The notes beneath the pieces were generated by a model. The model did not search any database. It had not been told where the DNA came from and saw nothing but the letters and a program-made list of their open reading frames with translations. Made by a program: the position numbers and the translations under genes. A stretch of DNA of 47,744 nt from Hyphochytrium catenoides. Taxonomy: Eukaryota > Protista > Hyphochytriomycota. Below, piece after piece: positions 19,421 to 40,607 of this stretch (its first letter is position 1; each line of letters opens with the position of its first letter). The stretch is taken from positions 1-47,744 of the forward strand of contig FLMG01003682.1 in assembly GCA_900088475.1 (NCBI GenBank), in the 5' to 3' direction.

Positions 19421-19937
19421 GCACCAGCAGAACTGGATGATGACGGGGCGGCCTGCTCCATGCAGGAAAAGAGCTCCAACAAAGCAGGCACTTGCCTAGC
19501 TCTCACTGAAGAGTTGGAGGTGATTCTCTACGACATGACCTAGGTCTTCAGGGTTACTGCTTCTCTTTCACTTTACCTTGAAAGTGGCTCCGCCACTCAG
19601 ACCCGGAGTTATCGGGAAGTTCTCAGAGCAGGTACTATGGTCTACGGCTACCTCGTCTGAGTAAGAGCTATGGTTTCAGCACGGCACCTGGGGCCCGAAA
19701 TGGTGCTGCACAAGTCATGTTGTTGCACTCTTACAACAATAGGGCCAGAGTTTACCAAAGGGCAGGGGCTGGAATCGGAGACGATGGCACCTATATCCTG
19801 TGCCACTGAGAACTTCCTAATCTGTGTAGCTTAGTTCAATTCAAAAGCGATGTTGGGGCTGTGATACACTGTGAGGCTTCTTGCCATGCCCTTGCAGAAC
19901 ACTTAGCTTTGTTCCAGAGACTCAGCTAGGTCTTACA

Positions 19938-22900
19938 ATGGTGCTGGGCGAGCAGCTCAAGAAATATATAGACCGCTTCTTGGCGGAGTACGTGGAGGTG
20001 GGTTATGATCTTCGGATTAACCTCTGGAGTTCAGAGAATATTCGATTGGAGGGGGTGAGACTTAGGCAGTCTGTCATCCCCTCATCTCTCCCTTTTGTGC
20101 TCAAAGTCGGCTATATTGGGGAGATCAGTGGGTACATTCCCTTAGCAACGCTAGGCAATACACCAGCTCGCCTAACGTTCGCAGACGTGCTTATCGTTGT
20201 GGGCCCATTAAGTGAGAAGGATCGCAACGAGGCTCACGCTTTCGAAAACTTAGAGAAGGAGAAGCTTCAAAAGCTGGATGAGGATTTGGAAGTCAGACTT
20301 CGCGGCATTCCCCAAGATACCACCGAGACGGCGGGCTACTTTGGTGTCGATGGTTATGTAGGCCGCCTCATAACAAGGGTGATCGACAACCTGCAGATCA
20401 AGATCAAAAACCTGCACATCCGTTTCGAGGGCGAATGCGATGCTGCATGGATGCCGCGTCAGTCTGGCAAGTTTGCTGTTGGTGTTAGCCTTGAGGAGCT
20501 TTACGCTGAGACAACCGGGCCCAGCTGGACGTCTCAAGGTTGGAATCTTGAGACAGCGACTGAGCGAAACGTAGTCTTTAAGCTTATCCAGTTCATAGAT
20601 CTCTCGCTCTATATCGACCCAGGAGGACTTCACCTCATCCACTCAAGTGTGCACAAGAAAATCATAGATGTGACGCTTGCCCGTCTAAAAGTCATGGGAG
20701 AGGCCAACGTGGGGTCTCAGTGGTGGCTAGAAAGCGAAGATGTGCATCGCCATCGCTTCTCGCTGGCGCCTGTCTCTGGCAGCATTAAGCTTACCCTAAA
20801 CACTGCTTCGTCCCAAGCGGAAAATGGCCGCCCTCGTTATGATGCTGTCCTGGAGGTTTCCAGACTTATTCTCTCAGTTGATGAGCAGCAGATAGCCCTC
20901 CTGATGAACCTTGTGGGCGTGGTAGACGAGTATTCGCGCTGGCTAGATAGCATTGATACGGATTACCAAGCTCGCTGTGAGGCCTTTCTCCGTTCGAAGG
21001 TTGAACATGGGCAGGAATACGAAGCGCTTCAGCAGCAATATGCAGAATTGTGGGAGCGCTTCGCCGTAGCCGCGAAGAAGGCGTCCTCTCAGCGCGGTTC
21101 GTTAGACCTTGCAGCAATGAAAAAGAGCCCAGACTATAATGAGATCGCACGACTAGAAAGAGATCTTCCGCTGAAAGCCATTATTCGCCTTAGGAATCAG
21201 GCGTCCTCAAATCTCAACCTTGTGGAATCAGCCTTCAATGCCAATGCTGGACTGCTCTCCGAGATAGGAGACGCGTTTGGGGTCCCACATCCTGAAGTCA
21301 AGATAGTCTACGCGGACGGGAATGTCGGTCTGAAGCTGATGCATGGCACAAAAGACCCAAAGGAGATAGTGGTGCAAAGGTGCATAAGCGGGGGGCAGAG
21401 TGAGGCTTTGGGTCTCGTGAAGCCCGGTTATATTCTTGTCCGTGTCAACGGGATCCCGGTACTAGGCAAGACTATTGAAGAGGTTTACTCCATGATTCAC
21501 GAAGCTTCCTTTCCCCGCGTCCTAACATTCAACCTTCCAGCCCTTCACGCAACCACAAAGATGAACCCGAGCTTGGTGGTTTCTCGCATAAAAATAAGGG
21601 CAGAGAGGTTAGCGCTATGGTTCTGCAATGGCAAGGAGAGAGCCGTGATAGCTTCAATGATGAGCAAAGACTGGGAGACAGTCATTGCGGGCCACGGACC
21701 AGGATTATTTTCCTACGATAACTTCGCTATATCATGTGAGACGTTCTTCGTGGAAGAGAGCTGTCAGGATCCGGGATTGAATCACTGCATAGTATCTTCG
21801 ATAGAAGATCGTCCTCGAGAACAACTGAGCCGTGCTCTAGACATTGCAATCAACCTGATCGACAGGAACCATCCTGACTGCAACGGATCTACGCAGGATC
21901 AATACTCAGAAGACTATTCAGCGCACTTTGGCAGGCTTCAGTTTGTCATTCACGGCGAACGGCTCCGCCTCTTGTTGGATGCCGTAGGAAATTTCATAGA
22001 TATCGGCTTCTATGCGGCAGGGAGGCGGAGTCCTAGCCCACGTCAAACCTCTAGTGCTGAAGATTCACAAGCTCAGGATGCAGTCTCCCCTACCTCTACT
22101 TCCTCTCTTACCGCTCCTCCCCAGATTGACCCAAAGCTGCAAACACACCTCCTCACAGCGAATGTGTCCTTTGAGCATCTGAGACTATGTTTTGCGGAGG
22201 AAACGGACGCTCAGTATGCTCCAGTTCGTGACGTGAAGAAGTCTTTAGGCTACAAGGTAGCCAGCTATCTGGGTCCTGTCCACATGAATATGTTAGACGG
22301 AAGGCGAGTCGGCTCCCATGTGCCAACACTCTTCATTGAGGCCTCTCGCAAAGCCGAAGCCGTTAGAGGGATTATAAAACTTCAGGCACTTTACAGGCGG
22401 CATGTAGCCCGCAGAATCGTTAGAGCGCACCGCGCCCTGGCGTGTAAGAGCAGGCGCTTTGGTTGGCTTTACGTGCGTGATGATAGTCTGACATTTAGGC
22501 GATGGAAGCGATGTTATTGCTTTCTAGTCAAAAAAGTGGAGCGCATCGAGGAAGTAGAAGGAAGAGGGGCAGAAGAAGAGGCAGGGCTGGAACCCACTAC
22601 CCCAAAAGAGTTCTGCCTCTATATCTATTTCGATGGGACCTGCCAACAGCTCTATAGGAGGATTGATCTTCTGAACCTGAAAACAGTGGACCTAGCCCCT
22701 CGATGTCGGGGCCCTAAGGTAACTTCAAGCTTTCCCTGTGGCGAAACGTTCTTGATCGAGACATCCACCAACCGCCTGATGTGTGCCGACGACAGTGTGG
22801 AGGACGTAAACAGCTGGATAGCTAGCATCAAGGATGATCTAAACCTTTCTCTGCCACTCGTCTCTGCGTCCCTTAATCCGACCATCACTCCGGAAAAGGA

Positions 22901-25900
22901 ACATGGACCCAAGGCCCCTCTTTCAGGAGAGAGCTTTGGCGATCTTAGCTCTGTCGTCGAACGCAAAGGCACAGACAATGCGGGACTACTTCCACCCACG
23001 ATACTTCTTCCGGAGGACGAGATTGACGACGATGGTCAGCTCGAAGATGACGAGAAGAGAGAGGGGAGTTGCCCTTTTGGTTATCAGCCGGACTTCCATG
23101 AGTCCTTTGTCAATAAGTTTCTTCGGGGTTCCGAGCTCAGAAAGAGAAGAGCAAGACCCGTTGCCTGGAGCTACTTCGTGTTCGACTCGCTTTCCACATC
23201 TCTAGCCATGAGTCGCGCACCAACTATGGCAGCCTCGGCGTTTTGCATTACAGCTGGAGCCAGTTTACTCGCCGTATGGAGTCCGCAAAGCAAGGTTCCT
23301 CAAGTCTGCTTTGGCAGAGCGCTGCTAGGTAAAGCGAGTTGGAGTAATCGGATATTCTATACACTGCCACTTCCTCGCAACCTGTGAACCTCCAGATTGA
23401 CCTTAAATTCTCTCTGCATGGCTTAGTTACTTACGTTGTCGCAGCATACCATCGAAGTAAATCAGGCTGCATATTCTTCTTCTGACGTTAGTTGCGGTTT
23501 CCTCAGTGTACTGTCTGTGACGGCTCTTTTTTTCCTCGGTGTCTCTACTTCATCTAACCTTGCGGTCTACCCACCTTCTTGTCCTTCCTTCCGCAACAAT
23601 TCACTATCCTGTCCCTATTGATAGGACTTGAGACCGGTCAGGTGTGTGCTATCTATATGGCTGGGCCCATAGTGGAAGACGTCAAAGATAGCTTACATGT
23701 GGAAGTCCGCTATTGCGGAGCTGATGCCATCCCATCGTACCGTTGTGGCTTATCCGAGGGTTTAGAGGTCAATCTATCCCTCAGGGGTTTCACAAACCTT
23801 TTTGGTCTCTTGGACGTAATCGGGGTAGTAGTGAATGAGTTGACCGTAGCTCTGCGAGAGGGGACAATGGACACCGCAGAACCAATCGGTCTTACATCAT
23901 CAACTGCACCATCGGGTGGGCTAGGTCACCTTTCGCTTCCCGATGAACGAGAAGGAGAGGAACAGAGCTCTGCTCTAATAATTGATGCACCAAGAACTTC
24001 TCAGATAGCACAGCCAGAAGAGGAAGGTGGGAATAAGAGCGGTTCACTCTATCACATTTGTCCCTACTAGTCTTCAACTCTGCGTGTCCTCTTTCGTCCT
24101 CCTCCCATTCCCTCTCCCTAGATTCTAGGGGCTGTTGCTTTGGTCTACCTATAGACGGCACTCACCACGTCCTGTAAGCAGCGCAATCTGTTTCTCAGGA
24201 GCAGATGCTGGCGGGGATTAGCAATAGACTCATGGCCACGCCACGGCTAAGTCCAGTGATAAAGGAAGAGGCGAAACGACAGAAAAGAGAAGTGGATGAT
24301 GGGCATCAATATAACGAGAATGATTTCACAACTACGTCAGTCCTAACGACGAAGAAGATTGTCATCCGAATCCAAGCTACAGCGTTCGAGCTCTATGGAG
24401 TGTCTTCGTCCAATATGGCGAAGCTTTCGTTGCCCCTATCTCTTCACTACTCGGCTTATCCGGAGAAGGAAGATCTTACCTTTACACTGGGGCCCCTGGC
24501 CTGTTTTGTCCTAACTAAAGATGTGGCCAGGACCATAACCAAGGTGAAGAGCTTATCTCTATGTTACTCATTGTCTCACTGGACTCCAGGATCAATCGGG
24601 GAGAGAGGGGTAACTGACCCAAACACCTATCGACTAATAACGGAGGAAGACGGTAGAAAGCAGGCTGCGGTTCATTACTTACGACAGCTCAACGTGAAGA
24701 TAGAGTCGCTGAAGGTGGAAGCCGATGGCAATCTGGAGCTTCTGGTAGCGTTGATAAACTCCATGGTCGGAGAGAAAAATGCATATAACTGGGAAGGAAG
24801 AGCAGAGGATTCAAGCCCTTCTTCTCAAGCCAATTCTGAAACAACGGGAGCACATCCTTCTCGGGCTGAAGTCTTCCCTGAGACTGAGGAAGGCACGCGT
24901 TCTCTCGTCGTTACTGCTCAGCATGGCCGACTGTTATCACTTGTAGCTTCTGAGAGAGAAGAGGGAGGAGGACGAAGCCTTATGGCCTCTGGGATGAGTG
25001 AACGTAGTGATAGATCACGGTATCCTCGGAGTGACGAGGAGCTTGAGGGAGAGACAAGGCCCAGACGTGCCAGTCGATGGAAACGCTTCCTTCAAGCCGG
25101 TGGAGATCCTGACGACGCGTCCGAGAATGATTGGGAGCTTCCAATTCCACAGGACGGGATATTTCTTGAGTCACCACCTGTTGACTCTGTACCAGATATC
25201 GTACCGACTCGAAGGAACAGCAGGGCATTGCCAGGGTATCATGGTGCGAGACGGCTAACTAGGGCCAACTCAAAACAAACAGAGCTCGAGAAGAGCGCAC
25301 ATAAGGTAAGAGACCAGAGGATCGAGAGCTATCAGAAGGGTTATGCTAACGGAGAGGGAATCACGCGTTATCAGTGGACGGGCTGGATTGAGTTGCTCTA
25401 CGTATACTCATATCTACACATCCCAAAATTTGAATTGGCGTTGACCTTCAGGACTTGACTTTAGCGCACTAAAGGTAGTTTAGAATCATTCGCTTCCGGA
25501 TTGTGGGAGTAGGTGACATGGATGAAAAAGGGCTAGACCTCCACGAGATAGTAGACTGAGAAGAGACCGAGTTCTTTCTGAGTTCTGTTATAATACTCAC
25601 ACCTTTATATCCAACAGGATAAAAGAGAGAGTGGGCGGATTGAAGTAGGAATGGACGAGCCCAGCGCCCCTGCGGGCCCTGCTACCTGTCCCGGAGCCTT
25701 ACTCTGCTACCAAAGCTTAGTTACCGTTACGGAGCCGGGTCTAGACATCACAATGAATCCCAGAACGATCTATATGCCCTACCTCCTACTCTCGGAAGTG
25801 GACGACAGACTATCTGTTACAGTTGATTTGATGAATATTCAGCTGCTCAAAAGAAGCTTGCAAAGGTGCATTACGCACACAGCTTCGCTTCTACTTAGAC

Positions 25901-28900
25901 CTTCTTGACATTATCCTGTTGACTCATAACGTGGTTGTATATCTGAGTCGCTTCAGTTTCTGCACGGTATGGTCCCTTCTTCATGAAATTGCCGGCCATC
26001 GTGATCCTTTCCACCCTCTCGTATAGCTCAGTGGCTTTCTCTTCACTCCACCTTGATCCGCATAGGTTTGCAATGGACACTTTCATTCCTATTGCCACCG
26101 TCTCTCTATACGAAATAGAGATACAGGCGAACTCTACATCGTTCTTCTCCAACGACCAGGTGCTCTCCTTATCTCTGGGCCTTAGGTAAAGGTATACTGT
26201 TGTCCTACGTTAGCTTTCAGCTTACCGCTGTTACCTCTGCTAGGTCCCAGTACTACAATACGCTGCTTGCGGAGTGGGAGCCTTTCGTAGAGCCTTGGAG
26301 GGTCTCTCTATATGTGGAGAAGGGCATAGTGGATCCTACGCTCATTGTTAACGTCAAGGCATTCGAAAGGTCAGTCCGCCGTCAATAGTTATAAAAACCT
26401 GCTTCTCTTTTACTTGTAAAGCTCCTTGCCTGACACTATCTCTCTGTAAGTTAGCTCTCTTTGACTCTTTGAGCGACACAGAGTACTCAACAATCCGACT
26501 TAACCCTGGATAGTCCTTCTCATTGCGCCAGCCTTTTTCTGTGTTATGGCCTCACTGGTTTCTTGTCCTCCATTAGGCTAAACATCAACATCACATCGGC
26601 CTTGCTGGAGTTATACTATAGCTTCATGAGAGATAGACGGCCGGGCGGTCCGCTCAAGAGGTCGGCAGCAGATGACAACCGATCTTCTTTTATCCTAACA
26701 GGAGAGCAAGGTTCCGGAGGCAGGGTAGCCGTCATAAACGATCTCGGGGTGAGAGCTCTCAGAACTTTGTGGAACTCACGCACTACTGTGAAGCTGCTAG
26801 AGCCGCCTAATATTATACTATATGACTCATGGCTCCTTATCAGATGTGGTCCTAGGATTAACCTGGTTCTCGTTGGGTTGGCTTTGTGCGTGCGTCCATG
26901 TCTTTGAGATAGCGTGCTAGGAAATCGAGTCCTTGTAGCTGTTGACTCTGTTTAGCTATTGATCCCATCTGCCTGGTGGCCCAGTTCTAAGCGTATCCCT
27001 TCGGGACCCACATGTTCTACTAGGTGCCTATCCATCTTGCCAATCTTGGTACTTCCAGGCCCGGAAAGCTTCATATTCAGATTCGGGATGGGTGGACCCT
27101 TCCCAACTTTGTGCGCTTCCATGAATGCAAGATAACCCTCTCTCTTCTACCCTGGCGTCGTTCTTTCAGGACAAGGTAAGTAGTCGGTGTAGGTTATACG
27201 CTGTGTGACCAAGCCGCGGCCTACCAACCGGTTTCACGTCCTGTTACGGCTATTTTATATAAGTTGATACGATCGGCTTCATTCTGTCCGTTTAATGGTT
27301 TCTGGTCCTTACCTAGGCGGCTGGAGGGCGCCGCCACGTCTTTCATCCTAGACTATGAAGGCGCTCTACCGGGTGTTGCTCCAAAGCTTCTGATAAAATG
27401 CGCATTGCAAAAGAAGGAGGCAGCCGTTATCTACCCAATGGTGAGTAGAATTAGGTAGATAGTGACGCAAGGGCGCCTATACTTCACTACACTACTGGCC
27501 CTGTGATAATCTCTCCAACGTGTTCGAGATGGCCCTATCTTTGGCACATCGTCGTTTAGATTCACATCTGCTCTCGCCATGCGTCTGGTATTACCTTTGC
27601 GGTCCATCTCTTCTCATCGTGTTGGGCGAATTTGTATGACAGACCAAACTCGAGGAAGGAGAGGATGTAGGGGGCTCTGAGTACATCCTTGTGGGAGAGA
27701 CAGAGCTTGACCTTGTCTCCAGGTTGAAAGTTTCAGACAGGCCCCTAAAACAGGCAAGGGATTGACTTTGCCTGCTCTCTTATGACGCAACCTCTGTGGA
27801 TGTTAAGCGTGCTACCATTGTCTGGCATGGTTTTACCTTACAAAGGCTTGGCTCCTCGATGATATGCAAAGCCTTAAACTACATGTGATGGCCATACGTT
27901 GGTCTCACACCGTCTTTCTAATCCTCAGTGGATTCGGATCCGTAATGCACAAGGTTTGGACACGGCTGAGCTTATGATCGTGCTGCGATTCAAGCCGGAC
28001 GAAGCCTTTACTGATCAAGTCCAGAGAGGACCTGCAGCAATGCCTGGGAAGTTCTTGAAGTTTGATCCCTTTGCACTCGGGTAGGGAGTCTTTGATTCCT
28101 TGCTTAGTTTCTGTAAAAAGCTACGGCCTTCTGGTTTGCGCTTCTCCTTCTTGTTTGTCTTCCTCGTTTGTCGAGATGGTTCTAGTAAGTTGTTAGCAAT
28201 CTGCCCACGGACAGTGTCACTAACGTATATACGGTCCGAGCTCCAGTTTGCTTTTTGACCCCCATTAACCCTGTTGCATTTCTAGAGATAATTCCCCCAC
28301 ACAACCCTCAATTATGTCATCGTATCATGAAGGGAGGGGCCTCACTGCTGCCAAGGTTCCCCCGATTGCATTGGAAGTGGACATGGGTGGAGGTGCTGCC
28401 CCTTGGGTTCTATTGTGCCCCCTACATAGAGCTGGTCGGTTCGTTTTAAGAGGTGAGGAACTATCAACTATCAGTGTGGGTCTAATCAATGGGTTGCGGT
28501 CAATTGCCAGCTTACAACGTTTTGAGCAGTGGCCCTCCTATTTAACCGTCGCATCGATTGTAAGGCACAGCGCCAAATCCTTACCGTCTTGAAAGCAGCC
28601 TCCTTTCTCGTGTATTTGCAAAAGTATTCTTAACATTGTTCTGTCACTCAAAATCTATGTAGGAGAGGGCAATCTTATAGTCGAGGCTAAGGTGGCTCTT
28701 CGTGATCAGTTCAAGCGCGTAGTCAAGCTCTCTTCTCCCGTCCGAGTAAAAAATTGCACCGCTTATGAGCTGAACATCTGGACTGCACATGTGGAGGAAG
28801 TTGATGCGGAGATCCCAGGGTAAGTATTCATGACGGTTGATGGGAACAGGGGCTCATTGCCGCAAGGGTGTGAGGGAGCTACTCGTGGTGGAAGAGCATA

Positions 28901-31900
28901 TTTCAAAGATAGCAAACATAAATGGAGCAGTTTCAGATCAAGCATGTGCAGATTCGTCGTGGTATTGAGGTGAAGGCAATGAAGTTGGAGGCCTTCACAG
29001 GAACATGGGGGTTAGATAACGATAAAAGGGAAAAGATTTTTTGCTTGAGAATTTTAGTAGTGAAAAACTAACGAGCTCCCTCTCATCTTCGCTCAGTTCT
29101 GGCGTCACTTGTCTTGAGCCAGGCCGGAAACTCTCTGTTCCTCTTCAAAGCCTCCAGGCGACCCCACGTCATTACGTCCGTATGCAGGCTGGGCACGGAC
29201 GACCAGTGAACCTTCTTGAGGTGGAACACTGCGCACCAGGCAACTTCATTCTTTACAGCAAAAGTGCCACATCAAACGATGAGATAGGTAGGTGGATGAG
29301 TTGTGGCGCCTATGAGTTACTAATCCAATCCAGTCCAAATGACTTGAATTCTTATCGGACGTCGAATCCGCCTCGTCCCCTACTTCCTTTTTTGCCTTCA
29401 TCTGCCCTCTATCTTTGTCGTCTTTGCTTGGTGGTAAGATATCTGTTAATTTGCTTTGCTTATGTGGAACTTGCATGCGATACTTTAGGCATGTGTTTCT
29501 TTGTAAGCATCGTGGAGCAAATGCGGCACATATTCCAGGAGCAACAAAACGTCGCCTCTTCCACACCTTCGTCGTCTTCCCTCCGGGGGACAATTACGAC
29601 TCTTTCGGTCTTCCCCTGCCTCACTTTCGAGAACGCCCTCCCAGTTCGCTTGGAGTACAAAGTGGAGTCGGGGAACGGGAAGGAGATAGGCGCAGGCTTT
29701 CTAGGTCCAGGTATGTAAGAGGAAAAGAGAAAGGAGCTAGTAGCCGCCATTAGGGTGGAATTTCTATATGATCAGCAATTGACTTTCTATGGGTCATGCG
29801 CTGAGTTCACACTGGGTCTATCATGTATCGGTCGGTTGGAGCCTTACTTTAGCCTGCTTGACACGGAAGCTTATCAATTTTGCCCTGCTAATAATCTGCT
29901 CTCCGGATCCCGTTTCTGAACACAAGGCGAAGAGCGCGACTTCTACGAGTTTGGACCTCGCTCCAATCTGTTCGTTCGACTTCCTTCCCTGGATACGCAG
30001 TGGTCCGCGCCTTTGAACTTCGCCTCCTTGGTGGCGCCCAAGGTTGGCAGCAGTCTCTGCTCTCAGACGGTGACACAGGCACAAGATCTACAAGAAGGCG
30101 ATGTAGGTGGAAGGCACAGGTTCGTCATGTGTATCTAACCCAATTCCTCAAGAGTCTCTTAAGGCTTTATTTGGGGTGCAGACCACGATTATTATTGCAT
30201 TTATATCCTTTCAGGGCTAATGGGATGGTAGTTATATGGTCTAACACAGGGTCGGATATCATAACCTAACGATCGTCCGGTTAGATTTTTGAGCGCCTGC
30301 CTGCGTGTTATCTCCGAGCATTTTATTGCGTCCGATTTATTCCGCTTACTCTGACTTCAGACATTTACCTGCTATTTCTTGCAGGGACGAGGTGGTCGAG
30401 TTCTACTCGGCTTCTGACAAGATGCAAATCTTCTCTTCCTCACTGAATGACTCGGCGCATATTTTCACTGCACAGTTAGATTTTGCGGTATCTGGTGAGT
30501 GCTCCTCAGACATTTCCGCCTTCTCGTCCCCATTGAGGGCAATTAGCAGTGCTGACGACCCGGACGTTTGCACTCTGGCGGTGGGAAATTGATTCACCAT
30601 CTATCTTCGAGCATTTGATTTACCATATTGTATCTATCTATTCTCTCTAGTAGTTGACCCTGTGCTTCGAGCATTAGTTTTGGTCGCTTAAACGGCAATC
30701 TTTATCCACCTCTGTACGTTGATGTCAGACCATGGAGGGCCACGAGTGGTCATCTTTGCCAATCTCTGGCTCTATAATGAGAGTCATATACCCCAGCTAC
30801 TCTTCAGGTAATGCTATAGTCATTCAGCACGTAGGTGGCTTGCATTAAAGGGAGACCGGCAGCCATCAGCTCCTTGAGTGCGATTCCAAGCGGTTGTCGG
30901 GGGTTTAACCTTTGAGTTGGCGCTTCTAGTCCTCTATTTGCGTTGCTAGACCATCGTGTGGTGCTAAAAGCCACATTGACGGTCCTTGTTGTTCACCCGT
31001 TCGCTGCCCTGTATACAGGTACACTGAAGAACCAGAGTCCAAGATTACCGTCGCACCGCAGATCCTACGTTCTCGACCTGTGCCAACACTAATGCACTGC
31101 CCGACCCAGAAGGTACATACGGTTGAAGGATTTGACATACACCGGGTGGGACGTCACCCGGAAAGAGTCTCAGCTAGCCAGAGGATCCCTGAATGGGCTA
31201 GAGGAATCAGCCACGCGTCTCCCTCCGTTGACTCGTAGTGTCGTAGTTCTAACCGCTTCCTTTTATTGTAGTTCCAGATCGCAACCTATGTTGACTCTCA
31301 GTTATCTCAATGGTCTATCTTCACGCCTGCTACAGCCGTTGGGGTACAAGGCGAAGTATCCTTTCATTCGAAGGATGCAGCTGCGCAAAAGGTCCGCTCG
31401 GACGTTGGAATAGCGGTGTATAGGCCCTCAGGCCGCTTCCACCGGTCAGCACAGGTAAATGAACACCAATATAATGGCAATTTAGAGGGTCGAATTTGAT
31501 GCGCTAAGGAAATCTATCACTTTGGCTATCTTCACTTGCGTTTGGGCACTATGTTTGCCACATGTCTTTGAAACACTGTCAACTTGCCTAACCTCTGTGT
31601 CCACTCCGTGGTGCGATGTTGGCGGTGTGTCCATGATCACGATTTCTACCCTTTACGGACCAGGTGGTCATTACTCCCCGCTACGTGTTCGTGAACAAGC
31701 TATCCTTCACCTTTGAGGTAAGAGTGGTATTGTTGTTAACTACACAACAGTTGCCATGAGGTGGTGGTCCGTTGACTATCACGAAAGGAGTTTTTCAGAG
31801 CTCATGTTTCCTTCTGATCGACCTCTGACGTCGGGCAGTACAGAGTATAAGCTCTCTTACGTTCTTTCTTGTAGGTCCGTGGAGTGTCAAAGGCCAGTCC

Positions 31901-34900
31901 CGCTCGCCTCATTGAGCGAGCAGCCCCCATCACGATTCCACCGGCCAAAGGACAAGAGCCATCCGTGACCCCCTACGACTTCCTTGTGACGTTCCAGCGT
32001 TCAGTCCAGATCAGGCAAAAGCTACCAGGAGCAATGTATGAGAACTTCTTTGCGAAATTCCGGGGTTTGGGGTGAAATTGGAAAGGGAAGCGAGGGGTCC
32101 TGAAGGGGCAAATTGCCTTGAAAGTGAGCCACGAAACGGCCAGAACAATTTCTGACGCTGAGAGACAGATAGCTGTTATACGTTTCCTCTTCTGATCATT
32201 TCTCTATGCGAACCACGGCTTATCCTTCACTATGCACAGGTGGAGTGGTAACTTTGTTCTGGACGAGGAGGGTGAGTTCCCGCTCAGGCTGCGGGTGCAG
32301 AAGCTGGAAGACACTCTCCAGGTAGGTTCAATGGTAGGTGTGGAGACAAGGAAGTTAGCAGGGTCACACTCTACTACCACTTGTGCTCGTTGTGAAATAT
32401 GTTCCTAAAATGCTATTATATGCAGCCTTCGCTGGTCAGGGTGCGGATTACAATTCAGGGAGTTGGTGCATCAGTAGTCGTCACCATCGCGGAGGATGAC
32501 CCTCCTACCTTTCTGGTCAGCAACCAGTCGTCTGTTGATGTTCAATTGAGGCAAGTGGCAGGTTTAGAAGCTTCGGATGTTATTCAACCCAACGCTTCAA
32601 TGGCGTTTGCATGGGACAGACCGTTCGGCGCAAGGTATGCCGTCTTATCATGACCTCCACGCTTAATAAGCCGTTGTTCACCCTATTCCAACCGCGTTCA
32701 TTTTAACACATTGTACTTCATCTGTTAGGGAAGTCGTTGTCCGTCTTCGCTATACTCCTGGGGAGGAAGCCGCAGGACAGCGACCGAAGAAAAATGTCTT
32801 CTATAGTGATAGTCAAAAGGCGAGCTTTGACGAATTGCAGCAGGGACTTCTCCCACTCTCAGTGAGCGGGTGGTTTGGGAGCAAAATTGTTTCTGCGGAG
32901 GTCAGAGCCTTTCTATACACTATGTGCTCTACGTGCCCACTTGAACTTGTAATCTATCTCCTAGGTGGTTGTCCGGGGCCGGACACGGATATTGACCTTC
33001 ACAGAAGGCGCACAGCAATCAAGGGCAAAATACCTCTTGCAGGTCCACGTAATATCCTGCCGCCGATTCTTGCCTTCCCATGAGCCACTGGACGGTTCTG
33101 TCGAAGTTGTCTGCGGCGACCAGGTCAGCATAGATAAGTAGGGGGCGTGAGGTCAAGGCAGGCTTTCTTGTTATCTTTTAATGGTTATCCATCTAGTTCC
33201 CAAATTCCGGTGGCAGACGGCATAGGTTGTTATATGGTAGGGCCGTATTGATGTGCACCGAACCATCGATAAACAGAGAGAGACCTAGGGAGGAAGGGCT
33301 CACACTCTCTAATGATCTAGCATGGGTTTTATGCTGATGTGCCTCTGTTAGCATGCCTCGACACCACAAGTCCGATGTGGTGCAAATGGCCTCTACAGGT
33401 TTGAGACTCAGCTCACTATGAACTTTGGGAATAGACCGTCCGAGGTTACGGTACTGCTAAAAGAGGAACCAGTGGTAAGGTCTATGAGGGTGTCTGCTTA
33501 TACCTCCATTCTTTTACTCTTTGCTTGAGTGCTTCCCCCAAGGTCCACGTAAGGGTTTCTTTTACCTCTATCAAACCTGGCAAGTCAATTATGGAGTACT
33601 GCTCACGCAATTTATTCTCTTAGAAGTCGCAATGCCTGTCATCGCTTCCACTGAGTCAGAGTAATCGGTCCCTTTCTCGTACCTCCAACTATTCCTATGG
33701 CAAGCCAACGGAGCCAAATTGGCCCAAATCTACCGAGGTGCGAGTCTTAAACGCCGTCAAGGTGGTGTCAGAGTTACACACAAAGTGGAAGAGATGGGAG
33801 ATGATCAGGGAACTCTGGCCGCAGTGAGGAAATGGCTGTGGCCAGAACAATACATATGCAACTAAGGACTCTTTTCTTCTTTCTAGCCTGACCACATTAT
33901 CGAGATGCCGGATGTGCTTTCACCTATGGTGTACTCTTCCCCCGCCCAGCTTCCTTCACTAGAAGCCATCAGAACCGTAAGTAACCCTCATCAACTCCAA
34001 GCTCTATCTATTCTTACCTGGTTTACGCTAACACTCCTGCTGACTGGTGTCCTTTCATTGGATATCGATTGGATCGATGTAGCCCAACCTTCACGACAAT
34101 GGATATGAAGAATCGACATCAGTCAATCCTAACCCATGGGACAACCTGATACCTGACCCCGACGCCGACGTGAGTGGACGTCACATCTGAGATTAATACT
34201 ATGATCACTAACATTCATTACGCTTAGCCATTCTCGCATGCGGCGGGACGGGTTTACATTCGGATACCTCGAAAAAGTTGGGAGAATGTCGGGACTGTCT
34301 CCAACGCAGTTACTGATGTCCAAACGTCGTGGTGGAGTTTGACATCCTTCGATTCGGAGACGCAAAGAGAGGTGAGGTAGAGTAATCGGACGTAGAACTA
34401 TAGTATTGAGCAAAGACATGCCTTGCAAGAGGAGAGGAACGTGATACCGAAGTCGAGACATGTTGATGCCTGATACACTTTTGTCTCCTTCTTGCCAGGT
34501 GACGGTAGGGGAAGTTGAGTTGAGCTTCCAGTTTCGTATGGCCTATAAGGAGAAAATGGAGGAGGCTCACGAGGACTTGTGGTTCCGGGCACATCTCCCA
34601 AGCCTCGGCATCTCTATTATCAACAATTTGAAGCAAATGGAGGTCAGTAGCTCCCTTTTGGCTTCCATGAGGAATCTGTTTGCGTGGTACACAATCTTCT
34701 GAAGTTACCACTCGATAGGTGGCCTACTTCATAGTTCAAAGAGCGCATATTCTCTACTGGACTAAGGGGAACTTTAAAGAGCTGGGTCTGTCCGTGGGCA
34801 ATATTCAGCTGGATGACCAGATGGAGAGTAGAGTTGTCCTAGCACCTAAAATCTATGAGACCAAAGTGGGCACCGATGTCCGCTTAAGGGACCGTCTGAA

Positions 34901-36891
34901 AGCCTGCCTGAACTACAAGCATCGACGTCTTCTCCATGTGATAGACAGGAAAAGACTCAATGCTTTCCAGTTCCGTCTTCTTTGGTCCTCATCTCCACTG
35001 TTAACGCACGTGGAGCTCTTTGATATGCTCCTGCAGGACTTTGTTCTCAGTACAGATGAGAGATTCCTCGTTGAGCTAATCACAGTCTTCCAAGGAATAG
35101 GTGGACTCAGAACAGAGCCTGAGTTCCACCATGTTCTGGATCAAAGCGTAGATTACCTCTCGGATGTCAACAGTCAGGTATTGTTACAGTAAACGACTGC
35201 TTGGTTCACGTTTCTCATGCTGTTGGTCTTAGGGGACGACTTTGTATTTGGAGATGATGAACATCGAGCCTATCAGGATTAATATCTCTCTGGATATTCT
35301 TGGAGGAAGGTTAGCCAACAGCTTTTTGCCATTGGTGGTCTGTCTATTGCTTACCTTACCTGGTTCTCCTCTTGATCTGCTTTCTGCCTCTCTTTGATAG
35401 TTGGCTTTACTGTCTTTGATCGTGGCATGTTACAAGCTCCTGGACTGCTCCTAACCATTTTTATGAAGATACGTGAAGACGCTAGGTCCAGCGGGTCGAC
35501 GAATGGCCTCCTACCTTCCCAACTCTTCTATTAAAAAGCTTCGGATGTATTTTCCCTCCATTCTGGTCATACACGCCTACCAGCCGTTTGAAGTCATGTA
35601 CGAGCGTATCTACCGACATTACATGCAACAGGCAGCCATCATCATTCTTAGGGTGAGCGACAAGATCCTCTCCCTCATTTCTCCTGCACTTGGCGCCATT
35701 ATGGCAGCAGCGTCTCCGTGTCTTCCCGCTGAACATCCGACGTCCTGGCTAGGCCATAGCATACTCGTTAATCTTTTGGCTTCTTATCTTGGTTCAGTCT
35801 AGTTCGCTCTCTTCTGTGTTGACCTTCTCTGTCGGGAATTCCATCAGGGTTTGTACACAGTCACCCTCTTCGTCAACCCTTTGCGAATTATTTACCGCCT
35901 GGGTCATGGAATGTTAGAGGTCGTTAGGATGCCGGCGAGAGGTAAGGGGATGAGTTCATCATTCTCACACTCAGCCTCTGATATTTCTTCGCCCTTTTAG
36001 CATACGGGCTCGGCCTAATTTAAGTGTAGTCATGGGTTGTCACTCTTTCTCCGCCTCCACCCAGAATCATTCCCTTCCCTACGACTTATCGCCCTGCACA
36101 ATTTGTAGGTCTGGCCAGTGGCAACCCCGTGGAGCTCCTCACTGGATCGTATTTGGGACTGCGGTCTTTCGTGACGAATTTGATTAGTGCCAGCTATGAG
36201 ACCATCGCCGGGGTCAGCGGCATCCTGGCGCAAGTTGTAGGACAAGCCCTGCGAGACAGGGCAAAGAAGGCGCTCCAAGAAGAGGCATTGGGACTCCAGG
36301 TGCGTTGTTCGTTAAGTTTCATCACTTTGGCCTTTCTTTCTCTGCGTTATGGAGGTTAACCATCTACTTGCAACGTCTACGCCATGTTCTACCTTACTCT
36401 GTTACGCCTTGTCTCACCACCTCGTGTGTACACTCATTTACCCTAAATAGAGCTACATCATGGAGGAAGTGGCGAATCTCGATGCCATTGGAGAGAGAAC
36501 TTCCTCCAGGCAAGCTATTCGACAACCCCGGCGATTTGATGCTGGAGGTATTGGACTGCTGCGGGAGTACGGCCCAGGTCCTTTCCCGAAGGAGCAGCAA
36601 AGATTTATAGATTTACGGGCTGCGGTTACTCTTCAGGTGCGACCAGCATTCTAAGACTTTGCACAATATCTGTGCACCTCGTAAAAAATTTTCTAGTGTT
36701 GAGCCCTCCTGATGCCTTTGGTGGCACACCGATGCCTGTGTACGTTCTCAGCCACATATGTTGGGGAGAGGACCTAACTCGAATTTCCTTAGCGATGGTT
36801 CCGGCGCCGAAGAATCTTAAGAGCCCTACTACGCTCACAGGCTACCCCTGTGGACGACACGCCTGAAAAGAAGTTCTGCATCATTTGCTAG
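19938..36891 (+). CDS. VPS13: VPS13-family bridge-like lipid transfer protein, many exons, with PDZ, IQ, PH and C2-like insertions
   Basis: Chorein-N start 'MVLGEQLKKYIDRFLAEYVE..LRINLWS..LPFVLKVGYIGEI..IP', 'RVIDNLQIKIKNLHIRFE', 'YYNTLLAEWEPFVEPW', VAB-type repeats ('PCLTFENALP', 'PTFLVSNQS..FAWDRP'), 'SLGISII', 'GNIQLDDQM', 'RQPRRF..LLREY'. Exon 1 is 19938-23328; last exon 36793-36891. Not every internal junction was verified. Confidence 0.9.
21294..21533 (+). other. PDZ domain inside VPS13
   Basis: EVKIVYADGNVGLKL...IVVQRCISGGQSEALGLVKPGYILVRVNGIPVLGKTIEEVYSMIHEASFPRVLTF matches the PDZ pattern. Confidence 0.85.
22371..22842 (+). other. IQ motif followed by PH domain inside VPS13
   Basis: IIKLQALYRRHVARR; then GWLYVR..FRRWKRCYCFL...FLIET..CADDSVEDVNSWIASIK (PH terminal Trp helix). 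Confidence 0.8.
27754..27928 (+). other. GC-AG intron in VPS13
   Basis: CTA AAA CAG|gcaagg ... cctcag|TGG ATT CGG. Read-through stops after 3 codons and the nearest GT donor is the wrong phase. Confidence 0.75.
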
Positions 36892-37661
36892 AAGAACTTC
36901 GATGTATCGGGCGACAGATCATCACCTTTTGCAGAGTGCTATTTATTATTAGAAGGAGTTATTAGACTCCAAATAGAAGTTGGACAGGCAAAAGCCTTAG
37001 AATTTATAAAGTCAGTGGATAATGTGAGTGAGAAATTGCACCGGTGTGGGAGGGGTTGTACCTTTACCGATAGTATCTCCCTTGACCATGCCAACGTTTC
37101 TAGTGAGGGCCTAATAGGCGCTTCATTCTCCAGACTCTCCTCTCCGCCAGCCCTCACATCCTTCTTCATCTAGAGCTTTGAGCCTTTGGCTCGTAATGCA
37201 GTATTCCACCTCTTTATCCTCGTATATGAAAGCCTGACCATGTCTCCGGCATTATCAGTGCTACGCCACTAGTTTTTTGCTGAGATTAGGGAGCGGCGAC
37301 AAAGAGACGTTGCTAACCCCATGAATTACACGAGAGCGGATGACACTTCCGGTTGTACTCATCCCATGCTGCACCGCCCTCCACAGTCAAAGGAGCCTCC
37401 ACTTTCCAGTGAGTTTGGAAGTCTCACAACTACTCCAGGCCACTTTCTTGCTCATTCTGGCTTGTGACTTTGGTTGGCGCTTTCTCCATACTTCCTAGCG
37501 CTTCCGTATCATCACCTGTTGATGTCAGCCGAGCAGAGGACGCTGGACCTTTCTTACAGAGACTGCAATCGTTTCGATACAACCTTGGAACTAATGGTAA
37601 AGAAATTTGGAGCTTTAACGACGCTAGACCCTCACGGCCCCATCGTGGTGCTTGGTCAATG

Positions 37662-38322: not shown

Positions 38323-38524
38323 CTGTTTCAGAGACAGTATAGATGGGTGGGTCGTCTGGGGTGCTTTGCCATTAATATATATGAGAAGCACAGGGAGATC
38401 TAACCCCACCCACCTAGATGAAAATAGGGAGTGAGAATCAGATGGTGAAGTTGAATTTTTATAAACAACAGTTTCTATCTGAGTCAACTACAACAAGACT
38501 GGGGGTAAATTTTCAAACTGAAAT

Positions 38525-38611
38525 NNNNNNNNNNNNNNNNNNNNNNNNNNNNNNNNNNNNNNNNNNNNNNNNNNNNNNNNNNNNNNNNNNNNNNNNNNNN
38601 NNNNNNNNNNN
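38525..38611. other. Assembly gap
   Basis: Run of N. Confidence 1.
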
Positions 38612-39082
38612 AATCTTAAGCAATCTGAGGACAGTATTCAGCTCTTTGACACTCCCAAAAAGCATTCCCATAGTCTTGCTGTATAACAGGTGCGGCCACC
38701 CTAGAAAGCTCCTCTACTTGGAGATTCTTAGAACCCGTCGCTGCGCGATGGATGGCGCTGAGCGTAAGCGAGCAGTTACATTACGCTGCTTTGCTTCTGC
38801 TGTAAGTTGCTGTGTATTGCTTCTTGCTTGTTCATTCAGTTTGTTCTGCTTTGCTGCTTCTGTTACGTACAGCTGTGCCTTTGGAATGCGGAGCTGTTCT
38901 TTGACTTTTTTGGCCTGTTTTCTATGGTGTTCTTGGATTCTAGGTTTGTCGTAATTGTGTAGGGCTGTAGTTTTACTAAAGCTTTGACGACGGCTTTTGT
39001 TATTAGCCTGAATGTTGTGTTGGTGTTAGTTGGGGGTGGGGAGGTGGGAAGCTTCTCAGCTTCTTGTTTTTGTCGTCTTGCT

Positions 39083-40607
39083 CTATGAAGTTTCTTGTGT
39101 TTCTACTTTGAAGTTCTTGAGGTGCGTGAGCGCAGCGTGGGATTTGGATGTGTCATTTGTAAAGATTCCGCTTCTTCGCTCATCAGGCCCTCCTCTTCCC
39201 CACGGTAGAAGAGTTGGAAAGGTATCTGCGACCACCCTGGCGTTACTATTGACGAACAGATTCGACCTGCGGAAAACGTACGTTTCCTCCATTGTGGAGC
39301 AAGTGGTGTGCGACGTGATGAGAGAACTGCTCGTTTGCTCTCCCTCCGTAATATCGCTGTAACCACTTTGCTCCATTTCATGTATGACTTTCGCAGGTAC
39401 AGGGGCGTTACTGTCCTCTGTCCTGTCAACTATGACACCTGCGCATGTGCCCATATCAGAGGAGCTTTTTAGACCAGCACCCGTAGCGCTTTTTACCTTC
39501 TGGTCTACAAGCTCTCTGAGCGTCTCCGAGTACTACAGCTCCGTAGCGAGGGTTGTTGACAGGACCGCCTTCTCTTTCTTGGCCTTTGAAGAACTGCAAC
39601 GCCGCCGTAACAGCAGGCATTCTTGCTAGGTAGGGTTCCTTTGCCGCAACTTTCTGCTCTGCTGTCATTGCACCTGCGAGGATGACGCGAATGCTTCCCA
39701 CTGCACTTCTTGGTAGCATTGTGGCCATTGGCCCCGATGTGTTGGCTACTACGTAACAGTGAGACTTGAGCACCTGTCCTTCCCCTAATGTACTCGCGTT
39801 AGAACGATTAATAGGCATTGAATAGTTTTTCTTACCGAAGCGAACAGTCGATATGAAGACAGCTGGTGAGACTATAGAAACTAACTCTTCCTCCGTCCGC
39901 GTCAGTGCTGCCAGCTCCCCAGGCCACTCTCCTATGGCTAGGCCGTTGGCAATGGCGAATTTGGGAGGGTCCTTGCTTCTTGAAAGGTGGGCAAAGCAAG
40001 TCCTGCAAATCATAGCCTCTGCCTGGACACTTCCGTCCTCTAAAAGCTTTCTTGAGAAGCCTGCCACACTCAAATTATTATCGCATTGTTGAGTCAGTGT
40101 GGCTTTCCTCTACCTTGCTTCGACAACAGAAAGGGCTTCAGTCGTACGTCATAATCTGACGTATCATACTGTTTCAATAGTTCTTGGGGAAGTTCTTCTG
40201 AGGGCCGCAGCGACTCAAACTTCTGCAAGCAGATTGCAATTGTTACGATTTCGATGTACGTATTATAGTTACAGCCTCACCTCTATCAGACAATCGTTAA
40301 CTACATGTGGTTCACACTCTTCAGATGATCCCGCCAGGCAGAGAGTATCACATACACAACACACGTTGCGTATTATAGCCGGCAAGCTCATTCTCCTAGC
40401 ACACGCACGGATTATACGCTCTTGGTGCTCCTCTGAAGATGCGTCAAACACTAAGTTTCCTGCCCTGAGTGGTTCAAGAGTTTCTTCTTCTACTATATCG
40501 TTCTCCTCAAGATGACGTGCAAAGCCGTCCACAAGACATCTTCTCAAACGTCTCGCATGCTGCCTAGCATCATGGCCCCTAATTGCTTGGAGAGCTCGCT
40601 TCAACAA
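39083..40607 (-). pseudogene. Disrupted N-terminal part of a Helitron-like Rep/helicase gene (DUF6570-like region)
   Basis: 'VCCVCD', 'ICRTC..PPKFAIANGLAIGEWPGELAALTRTEEELVS', 'LKSHC', 'LPRS..IRVILAG', 'AALQFFK..NNPRY', 'FPTLLPWGRGG'. Broken by stops/frameshifts; no HUH Rep core or PIF1 helicase motifs follow. Confidence 0.75.

What the first reader, a model, noticed from the sequence alone, without database searches (positions are those of the whole stretch)
36451..36891. VPS13-family lipid bridge ending in an IQ motif plus CaaX prenylation box instead of a PH domain
Seen: after the conserved RQPRRF..LLREY motif, splicing 36636|36793 (cag|gt ... ccttag|CGA) gives AAVTLQRWFRRRRILRALLRSQATPVDDTPEKKFCIIC*. 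The IQ-like motif only assembles across this junction, which supports the exon; the alternative acceptor at 36840 gives the same C-terminus. Known: canonical VPS13 proteins end in a PH-like domain and dock through adaptors or phosphoinositides; CIIC is the farnesylated terminus of yeast Ras1. Inference: a self-anchoring, prenylated and possibly calmodulin-gated lipid bridge in which a polybasic IQ helix switches between membrane and calmodulin binding. I do not know of a described VPS13 with this terminus.
Basis: partly seen in the sequence, partly recalled or inferred. Interest (0 to 1): 0.82.

Follow-up and report, generated by a model that had tools for sequence, protein, structure and literature searches.

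The report
VPS13 lipid bridge ending in CaaX
The last two exons of a giant VPS13-type lipid-transfer gene really do replace the usual C-terminal PH domain with a basic IQ-like helix and a prenylation (CaaX) box. The same tail is kept in every water-mould (oomycete) counterpart I could find, so one end of this lipid bridge is probably tied to its membrane by a covalent lipid.

Summary
**Observation: confirmed.**
- Splicing 36636|36793 (GT-AG, phase 0, 156-nt intron) yields a tail that ends in CIIC and a stop codon.
- Eight hand-curated 3' exons (34499-36891) give one 477-aa open frame.
- That frame is colinear with oomycete VPS13-like proteins of 3,263-3,901 aa.

**Conservation.**
- All 54 relatives that reach the C-terminus keep the tail (45 distinct tails). 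They include Saprolegnia, Aphanomyces, Pythium, Phytophthora, Peronospora, Bremia, Albugo and metagenome fragments.
- Each has the Q-x-W-W-R-R-R-R helix, then a variable linker, then Cys at -4, V/I/L at -2 and X = Q, M, L or V.
- None of 45 canonical VPS13 controls has Cys at -4.
- In the controls the RxPR motif lies 125-431 aa from the end, which is room for a PH domain. In this family it lies about 70-80 aa from the end.

**Best reading.** This is a lineage-specific VPS13 paralogue in which a prenyl anchor plus a basic helix replaces the PH domain.

**Limits.**
- Prenylation is inferred, not shown.
- The IQ call is below the Pfam threshold (15 bits against a cut-off of 20.3), so calmodulin gating is only a hypothesis.
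- No RNA run was listed for this genome.

**Novelty.** The proteins are already in public databases, unannotated for this feature.

The parts
19938..36891 (+). Whole VPS13-like gene, with many short GT-AG introns. ATG near 19938, stop at 36889-36891.
   Evidence: tblastn of orthologues P0003 and P0013 is colinear from 19941 to 36636. The 3' model is.
19968..20940 (+). Chorein / VPS13_N region in the 1,168-aa first large exon
   Evidence: Pfam PF12624, E 2e-33, 115.8 bits against a cut-off of 80
32396..32650 (+). Open stretch holding an exon that matches the end of the VPS13 adaptor-binding (VAB) domain
   Evidence: Pfam PF25036, E 2.6e-4, 20.1 bits against a cut-off of 22.6, profile positions 488-568 of 570. 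Orthologues pass the threshold.
34499..34642 (+). 3' exon 1 of 8
   Evidence: GT-AG borders read. In frame in the joined model. Matched by tblastn to P0013.
34719..35177 (+). 3' exon 2 of 8, holding the conserved IQLDDQ block
   Evidence: Exhaustive HMMER search: 41-43% identity to oomycete proteins, E 1e-28 to 1e-29
35233..35309 (+). 3' exon 3 of 8
35469..35652 (+). 3' exon 4 of 8
35848..35941 (+). 3' exon 5 of 8, start of the ATG_C-like helices
   Evidence: 82% identity to P0003. The equivalent part of P0003 aligns to human VPS13C residues 3390-3508.
36109..36299 (+). 3' exon 6 of 8, ATG_C-like helices
36451..36636 (+). 3' exon 7 of 8. Carries the RxPRxF...LLxEY motif (36520-36570) and the first half of the IQ-like helix (AAVTLQ, 36619-36636).
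36637..36792 (+). Last intron, 156 nt, gtgcga...ccttag, phase 0
   Evidence: The length is typical of the neighbouring introns, which run 55-195 nt.
36793..36840 (+). Second half of the basic IQ-like helix (RWFRRRRILRALLRSQ)
   Evidence: Aligns to the invariant W-W-R-R-R-R block of the orthologues. The AF2 model of an orthologue has a helix here at pLDDT 65-73.
36841..36876 (+). Variable, Pro/Asp/Glu/Lys-rich linker
   Evidence: Poorly conserved and of variable length in A1
36877..36888 (+). CaaX box, Cys-Ile-Ile-Cys
   Evidence: Cys at -4 in 54 of 54 family members and 0 of 45 controls
36889..36891 (+). TAG stop codon

Best explanation
The window holds the orthologue of a VPS13 paralogue specific to the oomycete lineage. 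[quoted passage not shown]

It keeps the chorein/VPS13_N end, the repeating groove, the VAB adaptor-binding domain, the ATG_C-like amphipathic helices and the RxPRxF...LLxEY motif. The PH domain that ends canonical VPS13 has been replaced by a tail of about 75 residues:
- a conserved Trp- and Arg-rich helix with an IQ-like core, [AV]-[AV]-x-x-Q-x-W-[WF]-R-R-R-R;
- a variable flexible linker;
- an invariant CaaX box (CIIC here).

Inferred mechanism: the Cys is farnesylated or geranylgeranylated, depending on X, and then processed like other CaaX proteins. The acceptor end of the bridge would then be held on its membrane by a covalent lipid. The basic/aromatic helix and the ATG_C helices would supply the second membrane signal, and the VAB domain would remain available for adaptors. 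The helix may also bind a calmodulin-family protein, but that is not needed for this reading.

Shown: the gene model, the homology, the absence of a PH domain and the conservation of the motifs. Inferred: prenylation, its role as an anchor, and the target membrane.
For: - **Gene model.** All eight 3' exons have GT-AG borders and compatible phases. They join into a 477-aa frame that ends in CIIC and a stop. The frame is colinear with the orthologues.
- **Orthologues.** An exhaustive HMMER search and two word-indexed searches found 25 full-length oomycete orthologues and about 20 C-terminal fragments.
- **CaaX conservation.** 54 of 54 end C-a-a-X, with 45 distinct tails. Position a2 is always V, I or L, and X is Q, M, L or V. 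The 20-35 residues before the box are variable.
- **Controls.** 0 of 45 canonical VPS13 have Cys at -4. Their RxPR motif lies 125-431 aa from the end, against about 70-80 aa here.
- **Pfam.** VPS13_C (PF25037) is recorded for the canonical proteins and for no family member.
- **Alignment to a solved structure.** Human VPS13C aligns only up to residue 3508 of 3777.
- **Structure model.** The AF2 model of an orthologue's last 450 aa has no beta-rich domain after the motif. The W-R block is a helix at pLDDT 65-73.
- **Age.** The family is one clade. The window and a metagenome sequence branch below the crown oomycetes, so the tail is ancient.
- **The box itself.** CIIC is the FTase-modified end of yeast Ras1 (PMC6517510).
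Against: - There is no transcript evidence for this genome: no RNA run was listed.
- There is no biochemical evidence of prenylation in any member.
- The basic block lies 31-54 residues upstream of the Cys, behind an often acidic linker. It is therefore not a K-Ras-style adjacent polybasic signal.
- In Albugo the tail has no net positive charge.
- One member ends CGVV, an atypical box.
- The AF2 model is poor overall, with a mean pLDDT of 45.
Confidence: 0.72

Rival explanations
1. The prenylated tail is a calmodulin-gated switch. The IQ-like basic helix alternates between binding acidic membrane lipid and binding calmodulin or centrin, and so attaches and releases the acceptor end of the bridge.
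For: - The core [LVI]-Q-x-x-x-R is invariant. Pfam IQ is the top-ranked family on the tails (7 of 28, best E 0.003).
- The same proteins carry a second IQ motif closer to consensus (IQxxxRGxxxR, invariant Q/R/G/R) before an internal PH domain.
- VPS13 proteins bind calmodulin or Cdc31 as a rule (PMC13430412 and PMC5294781).
Against: - All tail hits are below the Pfam cut-off (15.2 bits against 20.3).
- Gly at IQ position 7 is replaced by Arg, and the basic residue at position 11 is not kept.
- The known calmodulin site on VPS13 lies at the N-terminal end, between RBG1 and RBG2, not at the C-terminus.
- No binding test is possible with these tools.
Confidence: 0.2
2. The terminal C-a-a-X is conserved for a reason other than prenylation. 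Examples are an S-acylated or redox/metal-binding Cys, or a hydrophobic C-terminal peptide recognised by a partner. In that case the tail is a protein-interaction module rather than a lipid anchor.
For: - X is Q in most tails (26 of 45), and there is a single V. Q is less common among textbook substrates.
- No second lipidation Cys lies nearby: none in the 8 residues before the box.
Against: - The exact position of the Cys at -4 is invariant.
- Position a2 is strictly aliphatic.
- A flexible, variable linker precedes the box.
- X drifts freely among residues accepted by FTase or GGTase-I.

Together these are the signature of CaaX substrates (rules from established knowledge of prenyltransferases).
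Confidence: 0.1
3. Gene-model artefact. The true transcript skips or extends past this exon. It might retain the intron, use the acceptor at 36841, or run into downstream exons such as the splice-site-flanked piece at 36953-37026 and a PH domain.
For: - There are no RNA data.
- A well-flanked, open exon-like piece exists at 36953-37026 and could be joined in frame from a phase-1 donor at 36577 (my own reading).
- The acceptor at 36841 is in frame.
Against: - The 36793 exon is homologous to the orthologues' tails, including W-[WF]-R-R-R-R and CaaX.
- The 36577 donor would delete the invariant GPG..P.E.Q block.
- The downstream open stretches have no Pfam hit.
- tblastn finds no similarity to canonical VPS13 PH tails. 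The best match in the whole window has E 0.047, and no listed match lies within about 1.7 kb downstream of the stop.
- The region beyond about 38.4 kb is transposon-like: DUF6570, E 9e-16.
Confidence: 0.03

Closest known systems
Canonical VPS13 (yeast Vps13, human VPS13A/C)
   Same: - VPS13_N/chorein start, middle groove region and VAB domain.
- ATG_C-like helices, which align to VPS13C residues 3390-3508.
- The RxPR(F/Y)...Y motif.
   Different: - Canonical proteins continue for at least 125 aa after the motif into a PH domain and match Pfam VPS13_C.
- Here only about 75 aa follow, there is no VPS13_C match, and the protein ends in an IQ-like helix plus CaaX.
- The profile score gap is very large: above 2,400 bits within the family against 157 bits or less to any other VPS13.
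Plant VPS13X (Levine 2022, PMC7613979)
   Same: It is a VPS13 whose C-terminal PH domain is replaced by amphipathic helices.
   Different: - That paper mentions no CaaX box, prenylation or calmodulin anywhere.
- The plant proteins recovered here, whose subfamily I did not establish, do not end in Cys-a-a-X.
- I did not test whether the oomycete family is related to VPS13X.
Prenylated CaaX proteins with a basic second signal (Ras1 CIIC, K-Ras4B CVIM)
   Same: - Identical or similar C-terminal boxes. CIIC is the box of yeast Ras1, and CVIM occurs in three family members.
- A flexible linker and a net basic tail in most members.
   Different: - The cargo is a lipid-transfer bridge of more than 3,000 aa, not a small GTPase.
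- The basic block lies 31-54 residues from the Cys rather than next to it.
Membrane-anchored bridge-like lipid transfer proteins (BLTP1/Csf1/Tweek, BLTP2/Hobbit)
   Same: They are bridge proteins with a built-in membrane anchor rather than adaptor-only docking (established knowledge).
   Different: - Those anchors are N-terminal transmembrane helices in the ER, the donor end.
- Here the anchor would be a C-terminal isoprenoid at the acceptor end.
VPS13-calmodulin/Cdc31 complexes (PMC13430412, PMC5294781)
   Same: A calmodulin-family protein is a constitutive VPS13 partner, and IQ-like sequences occur in this family.
   Different: The known site is a helical segment over RBG1-2 at the N-terminal end. 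A C-terminal IQ-like helix beside a lipid anchor has not been described.

Membership tests
VPS13 family of bridge-like lipid transfer proteins | N-terminal chorein / VPS13_N region | tested here: met
   Pfam PF12624, E 2e-33, 115.8 bits against a cut-off of 80, on window 19881-23384
VPS13 family of bridge-like lipid transfer proteins | VAB (adaptor-binding) domain of repeated beta-sandwiches | tested here: inconclusive
   - Window exon 32396-32650 scores E 2.6e-4, 20.1 bits against a cut-off of 22.6.
- Orthologues P0003 and P0013 pass the threshold (48 and 88 bits).
- The window is colinear with them across this region.
VPS13 family of bridge-like lipid transfer proteins | ATG_C-like amphipathic helices and the RxPR...Y motif after the VAB domain | tested here: met
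   - The equivalent part of orthologue P0003 aligns to human VPS13C 3390-3508 and to VPS13A (E 2.6e-5). Window exons 35848-36299 match that part of P0003 at 51-82% identity.
- The motif is shared with 34 canonical controls.
VPS13 family of bridge-like lipid transfer proteins | C-terminal PH-like domain (canonical members) | tested here: not met
   - Only about 75 aa follow the motif, against at least 125 in the controls.
- Helix and coil only in the AF2 model.
- No PH-like exon downstream.
- Plant VPS13X shows that the family tolerates this loss.
CaaX prenylation substrates (FTase / GGTase-I) | Cys exactly four residues from the C-terminus | tested here: met
   CIIC followed by the stop at 36877-36891. 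54 of 54 relatives and 0 of 45 controls.
CaaX prenylation substrates (FTase / GGTase-I) | Aliphatic a1/a2 and an X residue accepted by a prenyltransferase | tested here: met
   - a2 is V, I or L in all 45 distinct tails. a1 is mostly V, A, I or L. X is Q, M, L or V, and C in the window.
- CIIC is farnesylated in yeast Ras1 (PMC6517510).
CaaX prenylation substrates (FTase / GGTase-I) | Flexible, accessible linker before the box | tested here: met
   The linker is variable in sequence and length and rich in Pro, Asp and Glu (A1).
CaaX prenylation substrates (FTase / GGTase-I) | Isoprenoid actually attached | not testable with these tools
   Needs metabolic labelling, an in vitro prenylation assay or mass spectrometry.
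IQ calmodulin-binding motif (Pfam PF00612) | Match to the IQ profile at the curated threshold | tested here: not met
   Best 15.2 bits against a cut-off of 20.3. 7 of 28 tails match at E of 10 or less, best E 0.003.
IQ calmodulin-binding motif (Pfam PF00612) | Core [ILV]-Q-x-x-x-[RK] on a helix | tested here: met
   L-Q-R-W-F-R across the 36636|36793 junction. Q and R are nearly invariant in A1. The region is helical in the model.
IQ calmodulin-binding motif (Pfam PF00612) | Binds calmodulin or a relative | not testable with these tools
   Needs a pull-down, ITC or a complex prediction.

The most novel reading that the evidence does not exclude
This would be the first natural bridge-like lipid transfer protein whose acceptor end is covalently lipid-anchored. 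Its engagement would be switched by Ca2+/calmodulin (or centrin) binding to the adjacent IQ-like basic helix. That would be a K-Ras4B-style farnesyl-electrostatic switch built into a VPS13, conserved since before the oomycete radiation.
Probability: 0.2. Interest if true: 0.8.

Novelty: new variant of a known kind. Interest (0 to 1): 0.62.

Why it matters
How the far end of a VPS13 bridge engages the acceptor membrane is an open question in the lipid-transfer field. So is how that engagement is regulated. Known VPS13s rely on adaptors, Rab GTPases, PH domains and amphipathic helices.

A family that has exchanged the PH domain for an invariant prenylation box is a natural experiment. It suggests that permanent lipid anchoring of the acceptor end is compatible with bridge function. 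It also gives a simple, testable handle: a Cys-to-Ser change, or prenyltransferase inhibitors.

The family is present in all sampled oomycetes, which include major plant and fish pathogens and for which transformable species exist. It is absent from the plant, fungal and animal VPS13s sampled here.

Tried and rejected
1. **RNA evidence.** The look-up of sequencing runs listed no run, so read laying could not be used.
2. **Pfam on single small exons and on open stretches downstream of the stop.** Nothing useful came back.
3. **A rival exon at 36953-37026.** It has good splice sites and could be joined from a phase-1 donor at 36577. I rejected it because it would delete invariant residues and has no counterpart in any orthologue.
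4. **tblastn of 15 canonical VPS13 PH tails against the window.** The best E was 0.047, and nothing lay just downstream of the gene.
5. **AF2 of an orthologue's last 450 aa.** Mean pLDDT was 45, so I used it only for secondary structure and ran no fold search on it.
6. **Hydrophobic-moment scan of the tails.** There was no consistent strongly amphipathic segment, so it was uninformative.
7. **Literature.** I searched VPS13 with CaaX, prenylat-, farnesyl/geranylgeranyl and oomycete. The results I opened or judged by title or abstract concern other topics or reference lists. No native prenylated VPS13 turned up among them.
8. **Identity of the organism.** Not established. I ran no further search on it.
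Full report
**1. What is in the sequence**

The window is intron-rich eukaryotic DNA of about 50% G+C. A very large gene lies on the + strand.
- It begins with an ATG near 19938, inside a 1,168-aa open exon. That exon matches Pfam VPS13_N at E 2e-33.
- In the finding's coordinates, exon 36451-36636 (frame 0) encodes the RQPRRF...LLREY motif and ends ...AAVTLQ before the donor CAG|gtgcga.
- The acceptor ccttag|CGA opens a last exon at 36793. It reads RWFRRRRILRALLRSQATPVDDTPEKKFCIIC, and the TAG stop is at 36889-36891.
- The intron is 156 nt and phase 0.
- The in-frame alternative acceptor exists, but its exon would start at 36841, not 36840.

**2. Gene model of the 3' end**

Reading the DNA gives eight exons with GT-AG borders and compatible phases:
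- 34499-34642
- 34719-35177
- 35233-35309
- 35469-35652
- 35848-35941
- 36109-36299
- 36451-36636
- 36793-36891

Joined, they make a single 477-aa frame that ends in CIIC and a stop. The seven introns between them are 55-195 nt long, so the last intron is ordinary. If that intron were retained, the protein would end ...TLQVRPAF and lose the tail.

**3. Relatives**

- An exhaustive HMMER search of 1.84 billion proteins with exon 34719-35189 gave six hits. Five are VPS13-like proteins at 39-43% identity.
- A region search with one of them returned 25 full-length proteins of 3,263-3,901 aa. They come from Saprolegnia, Achlya, Aphanomyces, Pythium, Lagenidium, Phytophthora, Plasmopara, Peronospora, Hyaloperonospora, Peronosclerospora, Bremia, Albugo and unnamed metagenome sources.
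- tblastn of two of these against the window is colinear from 19941 to 36636.
- Pfam finds VPS13_N and VPS13_VAB in them, and a weak VPS13_M match in P0003.
- Window exons give near-threshold VAB and weak VPS13_M matches.

So this is a true VPS13-family gene with a VAB domain.

**4. The tail is conserved**

- Every full-length orthologue ends the same way. The order is R-x-P-R-x-F, G-[IV]-G-L-L, Y-G-P-G, an [AV]-[AV]-x-x-Q-x-W-W-R-R-R-R helix, a variable stretch, and then C-a-a-X (and alignment A1).
- The two window exons align to this without difficulty. The intron falls between the Q and the R-W-F of the helix.
- A profile search for short proteins added about 20 C-terminal fragments with the same ending. 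Named sources include Globisporangium, Aphanomyces invadans, Phytophthora capsici and Nothophytophthora; the rest are ENA and Logan contigs.
- In total, 54 of 54 sequences with the helix have Cys at -4, and 45 of the tails are distinct.
- Position a2 is always V, I or L. X is Q (26 tails), M (11), L (7) or V (1).
- The distance from the helix Q to the Cys ranges from 31 to 54 residues.

**5. The tail stands in for the PH domain**

- A profile search with eight full-length members separates the family (above 2,400 bits) from every other VPS13 (157 bits or less).
- The canonical proteins retrieved include fungal, plant and animal VPS13s and a 5,546-aa Phytophthora paralogue with a PX domain. Almost all of them carry Pfam VPS13_C (PF25037). 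No family member does.
- In the 34 controls where the motif was found, R-x-P-R...Y lies 125-431 residues from the end (typically about 130). In this family it lies about 70-80 residues from the end.
- None of the 45 controls has Cys at -4.
- phmmer of an orthologue's C-terminal part against PDB sequences aligns it to VPS13C residues 3390-3508 of 3777. That leaves about 270 VPS13C residues unmatched, against 100 in the query.
- An AF2 model of an orthologue's last 450 residues is poor overall (mean pLDDT 45). It shows long helices for the ATG_C-like part, a coil, and a 27-residue helix over the W-R block at pLDDT 65-73. It has no beta domain.
- Downstream of the stop there is no Pfam match and no similarity to canonical PH tails.
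- From about 38.4 kb the sequence is a gap of Ns and transposon-like DNA (DUF6570, E 9e-16).

**6. Age and placement**

In a maximum-likelihood tree of the C-terminal ~450 columns, the family is one clade (support 100). The window and an intronless metagenome orthologue (P0013) branch below the crown oomycetes, which have support 87. The window's branch is long, so its exact place is unsure. Earlier notes of the scan also call this genome oomycete-like but intron-rich and unidentified. The tail therefore predates the oomycete radiation.

**7. How it probably works**

*Shown.* This is a VPS13 with an intact N-terminal end, groove, VAB domain and ATG_C-like helices. Its PH domain is replaced by a conserved basic helix and an invariant CaaX box.

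*Inferred from the established rules of CaaX processing.*
- The Cys is prenylated.
- FTase is expected where X is Q, M or C. CIIC is the farnesylated end of yeast Ras1 (PMC6517510).
- GGTase-I is expected where X is L, as in the Saprolegniales and Albugo.
- Removal of -aaX and methylation would follow.
- The acceptor end of the bridge would then be tethered covalently. The basic/aromatic helix and the ATG_C helices would act as second signals.
- The target membrane is unknown.

*Odds.* I put the gene model at about 0.95 and prenylation at about 0.75.

**8. The IQ question**

The core L-Q-x-x-x-R is there and is conserved. However, Pfam IQ stays below threshold: 15.2 bits against 20.3, matching 7 of 28 tails. 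Gly at position 7 is Arg, and the basic residue at position 11 is not kept.

Two facts keep the idea alive:
- The same proteins have a second IQ motif closer to consensus, with invariant Q, R, G and R. It sits in front of an internal PH domain (A3). In the window it reads IIKLQALYRRHVARR near 22380.

A calmodulin/membrane switch is possible, at about 0.2, but untested.

**9. Comparison with what is known, and novelty**

- Levine's survey of RBG proteins lists VAB, ATG_C and PH as the conserved VPS13 accessory domains.
- It notes one exception, plant VPS13X, where amphipathic helices replace the PH domain.
- It mentions no prenylation, CaaX or calmodulin.
- Full-text searches combining VPS13 with CaaX, prenylat-, farnesyl/geranylgeranyl and oomycete turned up no description of a natively prenylated VPS13 among the results I examined.
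- The proteins are in public databases as "hypothetical protein", "PH domain-containing protein" or "VPS13". The sequences are therefore not new, but the feature appears to be undescribed.

I class it as a new variant of a known kind.

**10. Limits**

- No transcript data: no RNA run was listed.
- No biochemical data.
- The organism is not identified.
- The middle of the gene was not modelled exon by exon.
- The structure model is of low confidence.

Noticed in passing
window 22356-22560 (+), inside the first large exon: There is an internal IQ-like motif (IIKLQALYRRHVARR) directly before a PH-like start (GWLYVRDDSLTFRRW). In the orthologue alignment A3 the motif is IQxxxRGxxxR with Q, R, G and R invariant. 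Some orthologues carry Pfam PH (PF00169). Pfam on window 21174-23003 gave nothing at E of 0.01 or less.
   Followed up: partly
window 36953-37026 (+): An exon-like open piece lies in the presumed 3' UTR. It has a good acceptor (tattattag|) and donor (|gtgagt). It has no counterpart in any orthologue.
   Followed up: partly
window 39459-40073 (-), with a run of N at about 38523-38612: This ORF matches DUF6570 (E 8.9e-16), a domain I recall from Helitron-type transposon proteins. Transposon-like DNA and an assembly gap follow the VPS13 gene.
   Followed up: partly
window 8767-9564 (-): This is a single-ORF ribosomal protein uS5 gene. Pfam finds Ribosomal_S5 N- and C-terminal domains at E 2e-28 and 3e-26.
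   Followed up: no
window 1361-6550 (+): This is an importin-5-like gene in several exons (TPR_IPO5 at E 5e-13, Importin_rep_6 at E 8e-9, and a weak Importin_rep_4 match).
   Followed up: no
window 11675-12271 (+): There is a weak, sub-threshold match to 60KD_IMP, the Oxa1/YidC-type insertase (E 2.7e-4).
   Followed up: no
P0004 and P0119 (same 22,098-bp Logan contig): These two separately called pieces may belong to one orthologue. If so, the gene is interrupted, as in the window. The C-terminal piece ends in the W-W-R-R-R helix and CSLQ.
   Followed up: no
P0094 / P0095 (Phytophthora ramorum and a Logan contig): This is a different oomycete VPS13 paralogue of about 5,550 aa with a PX domain (PF00787). 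It has VPS13_C and no CaaX box.
   Followed up: no
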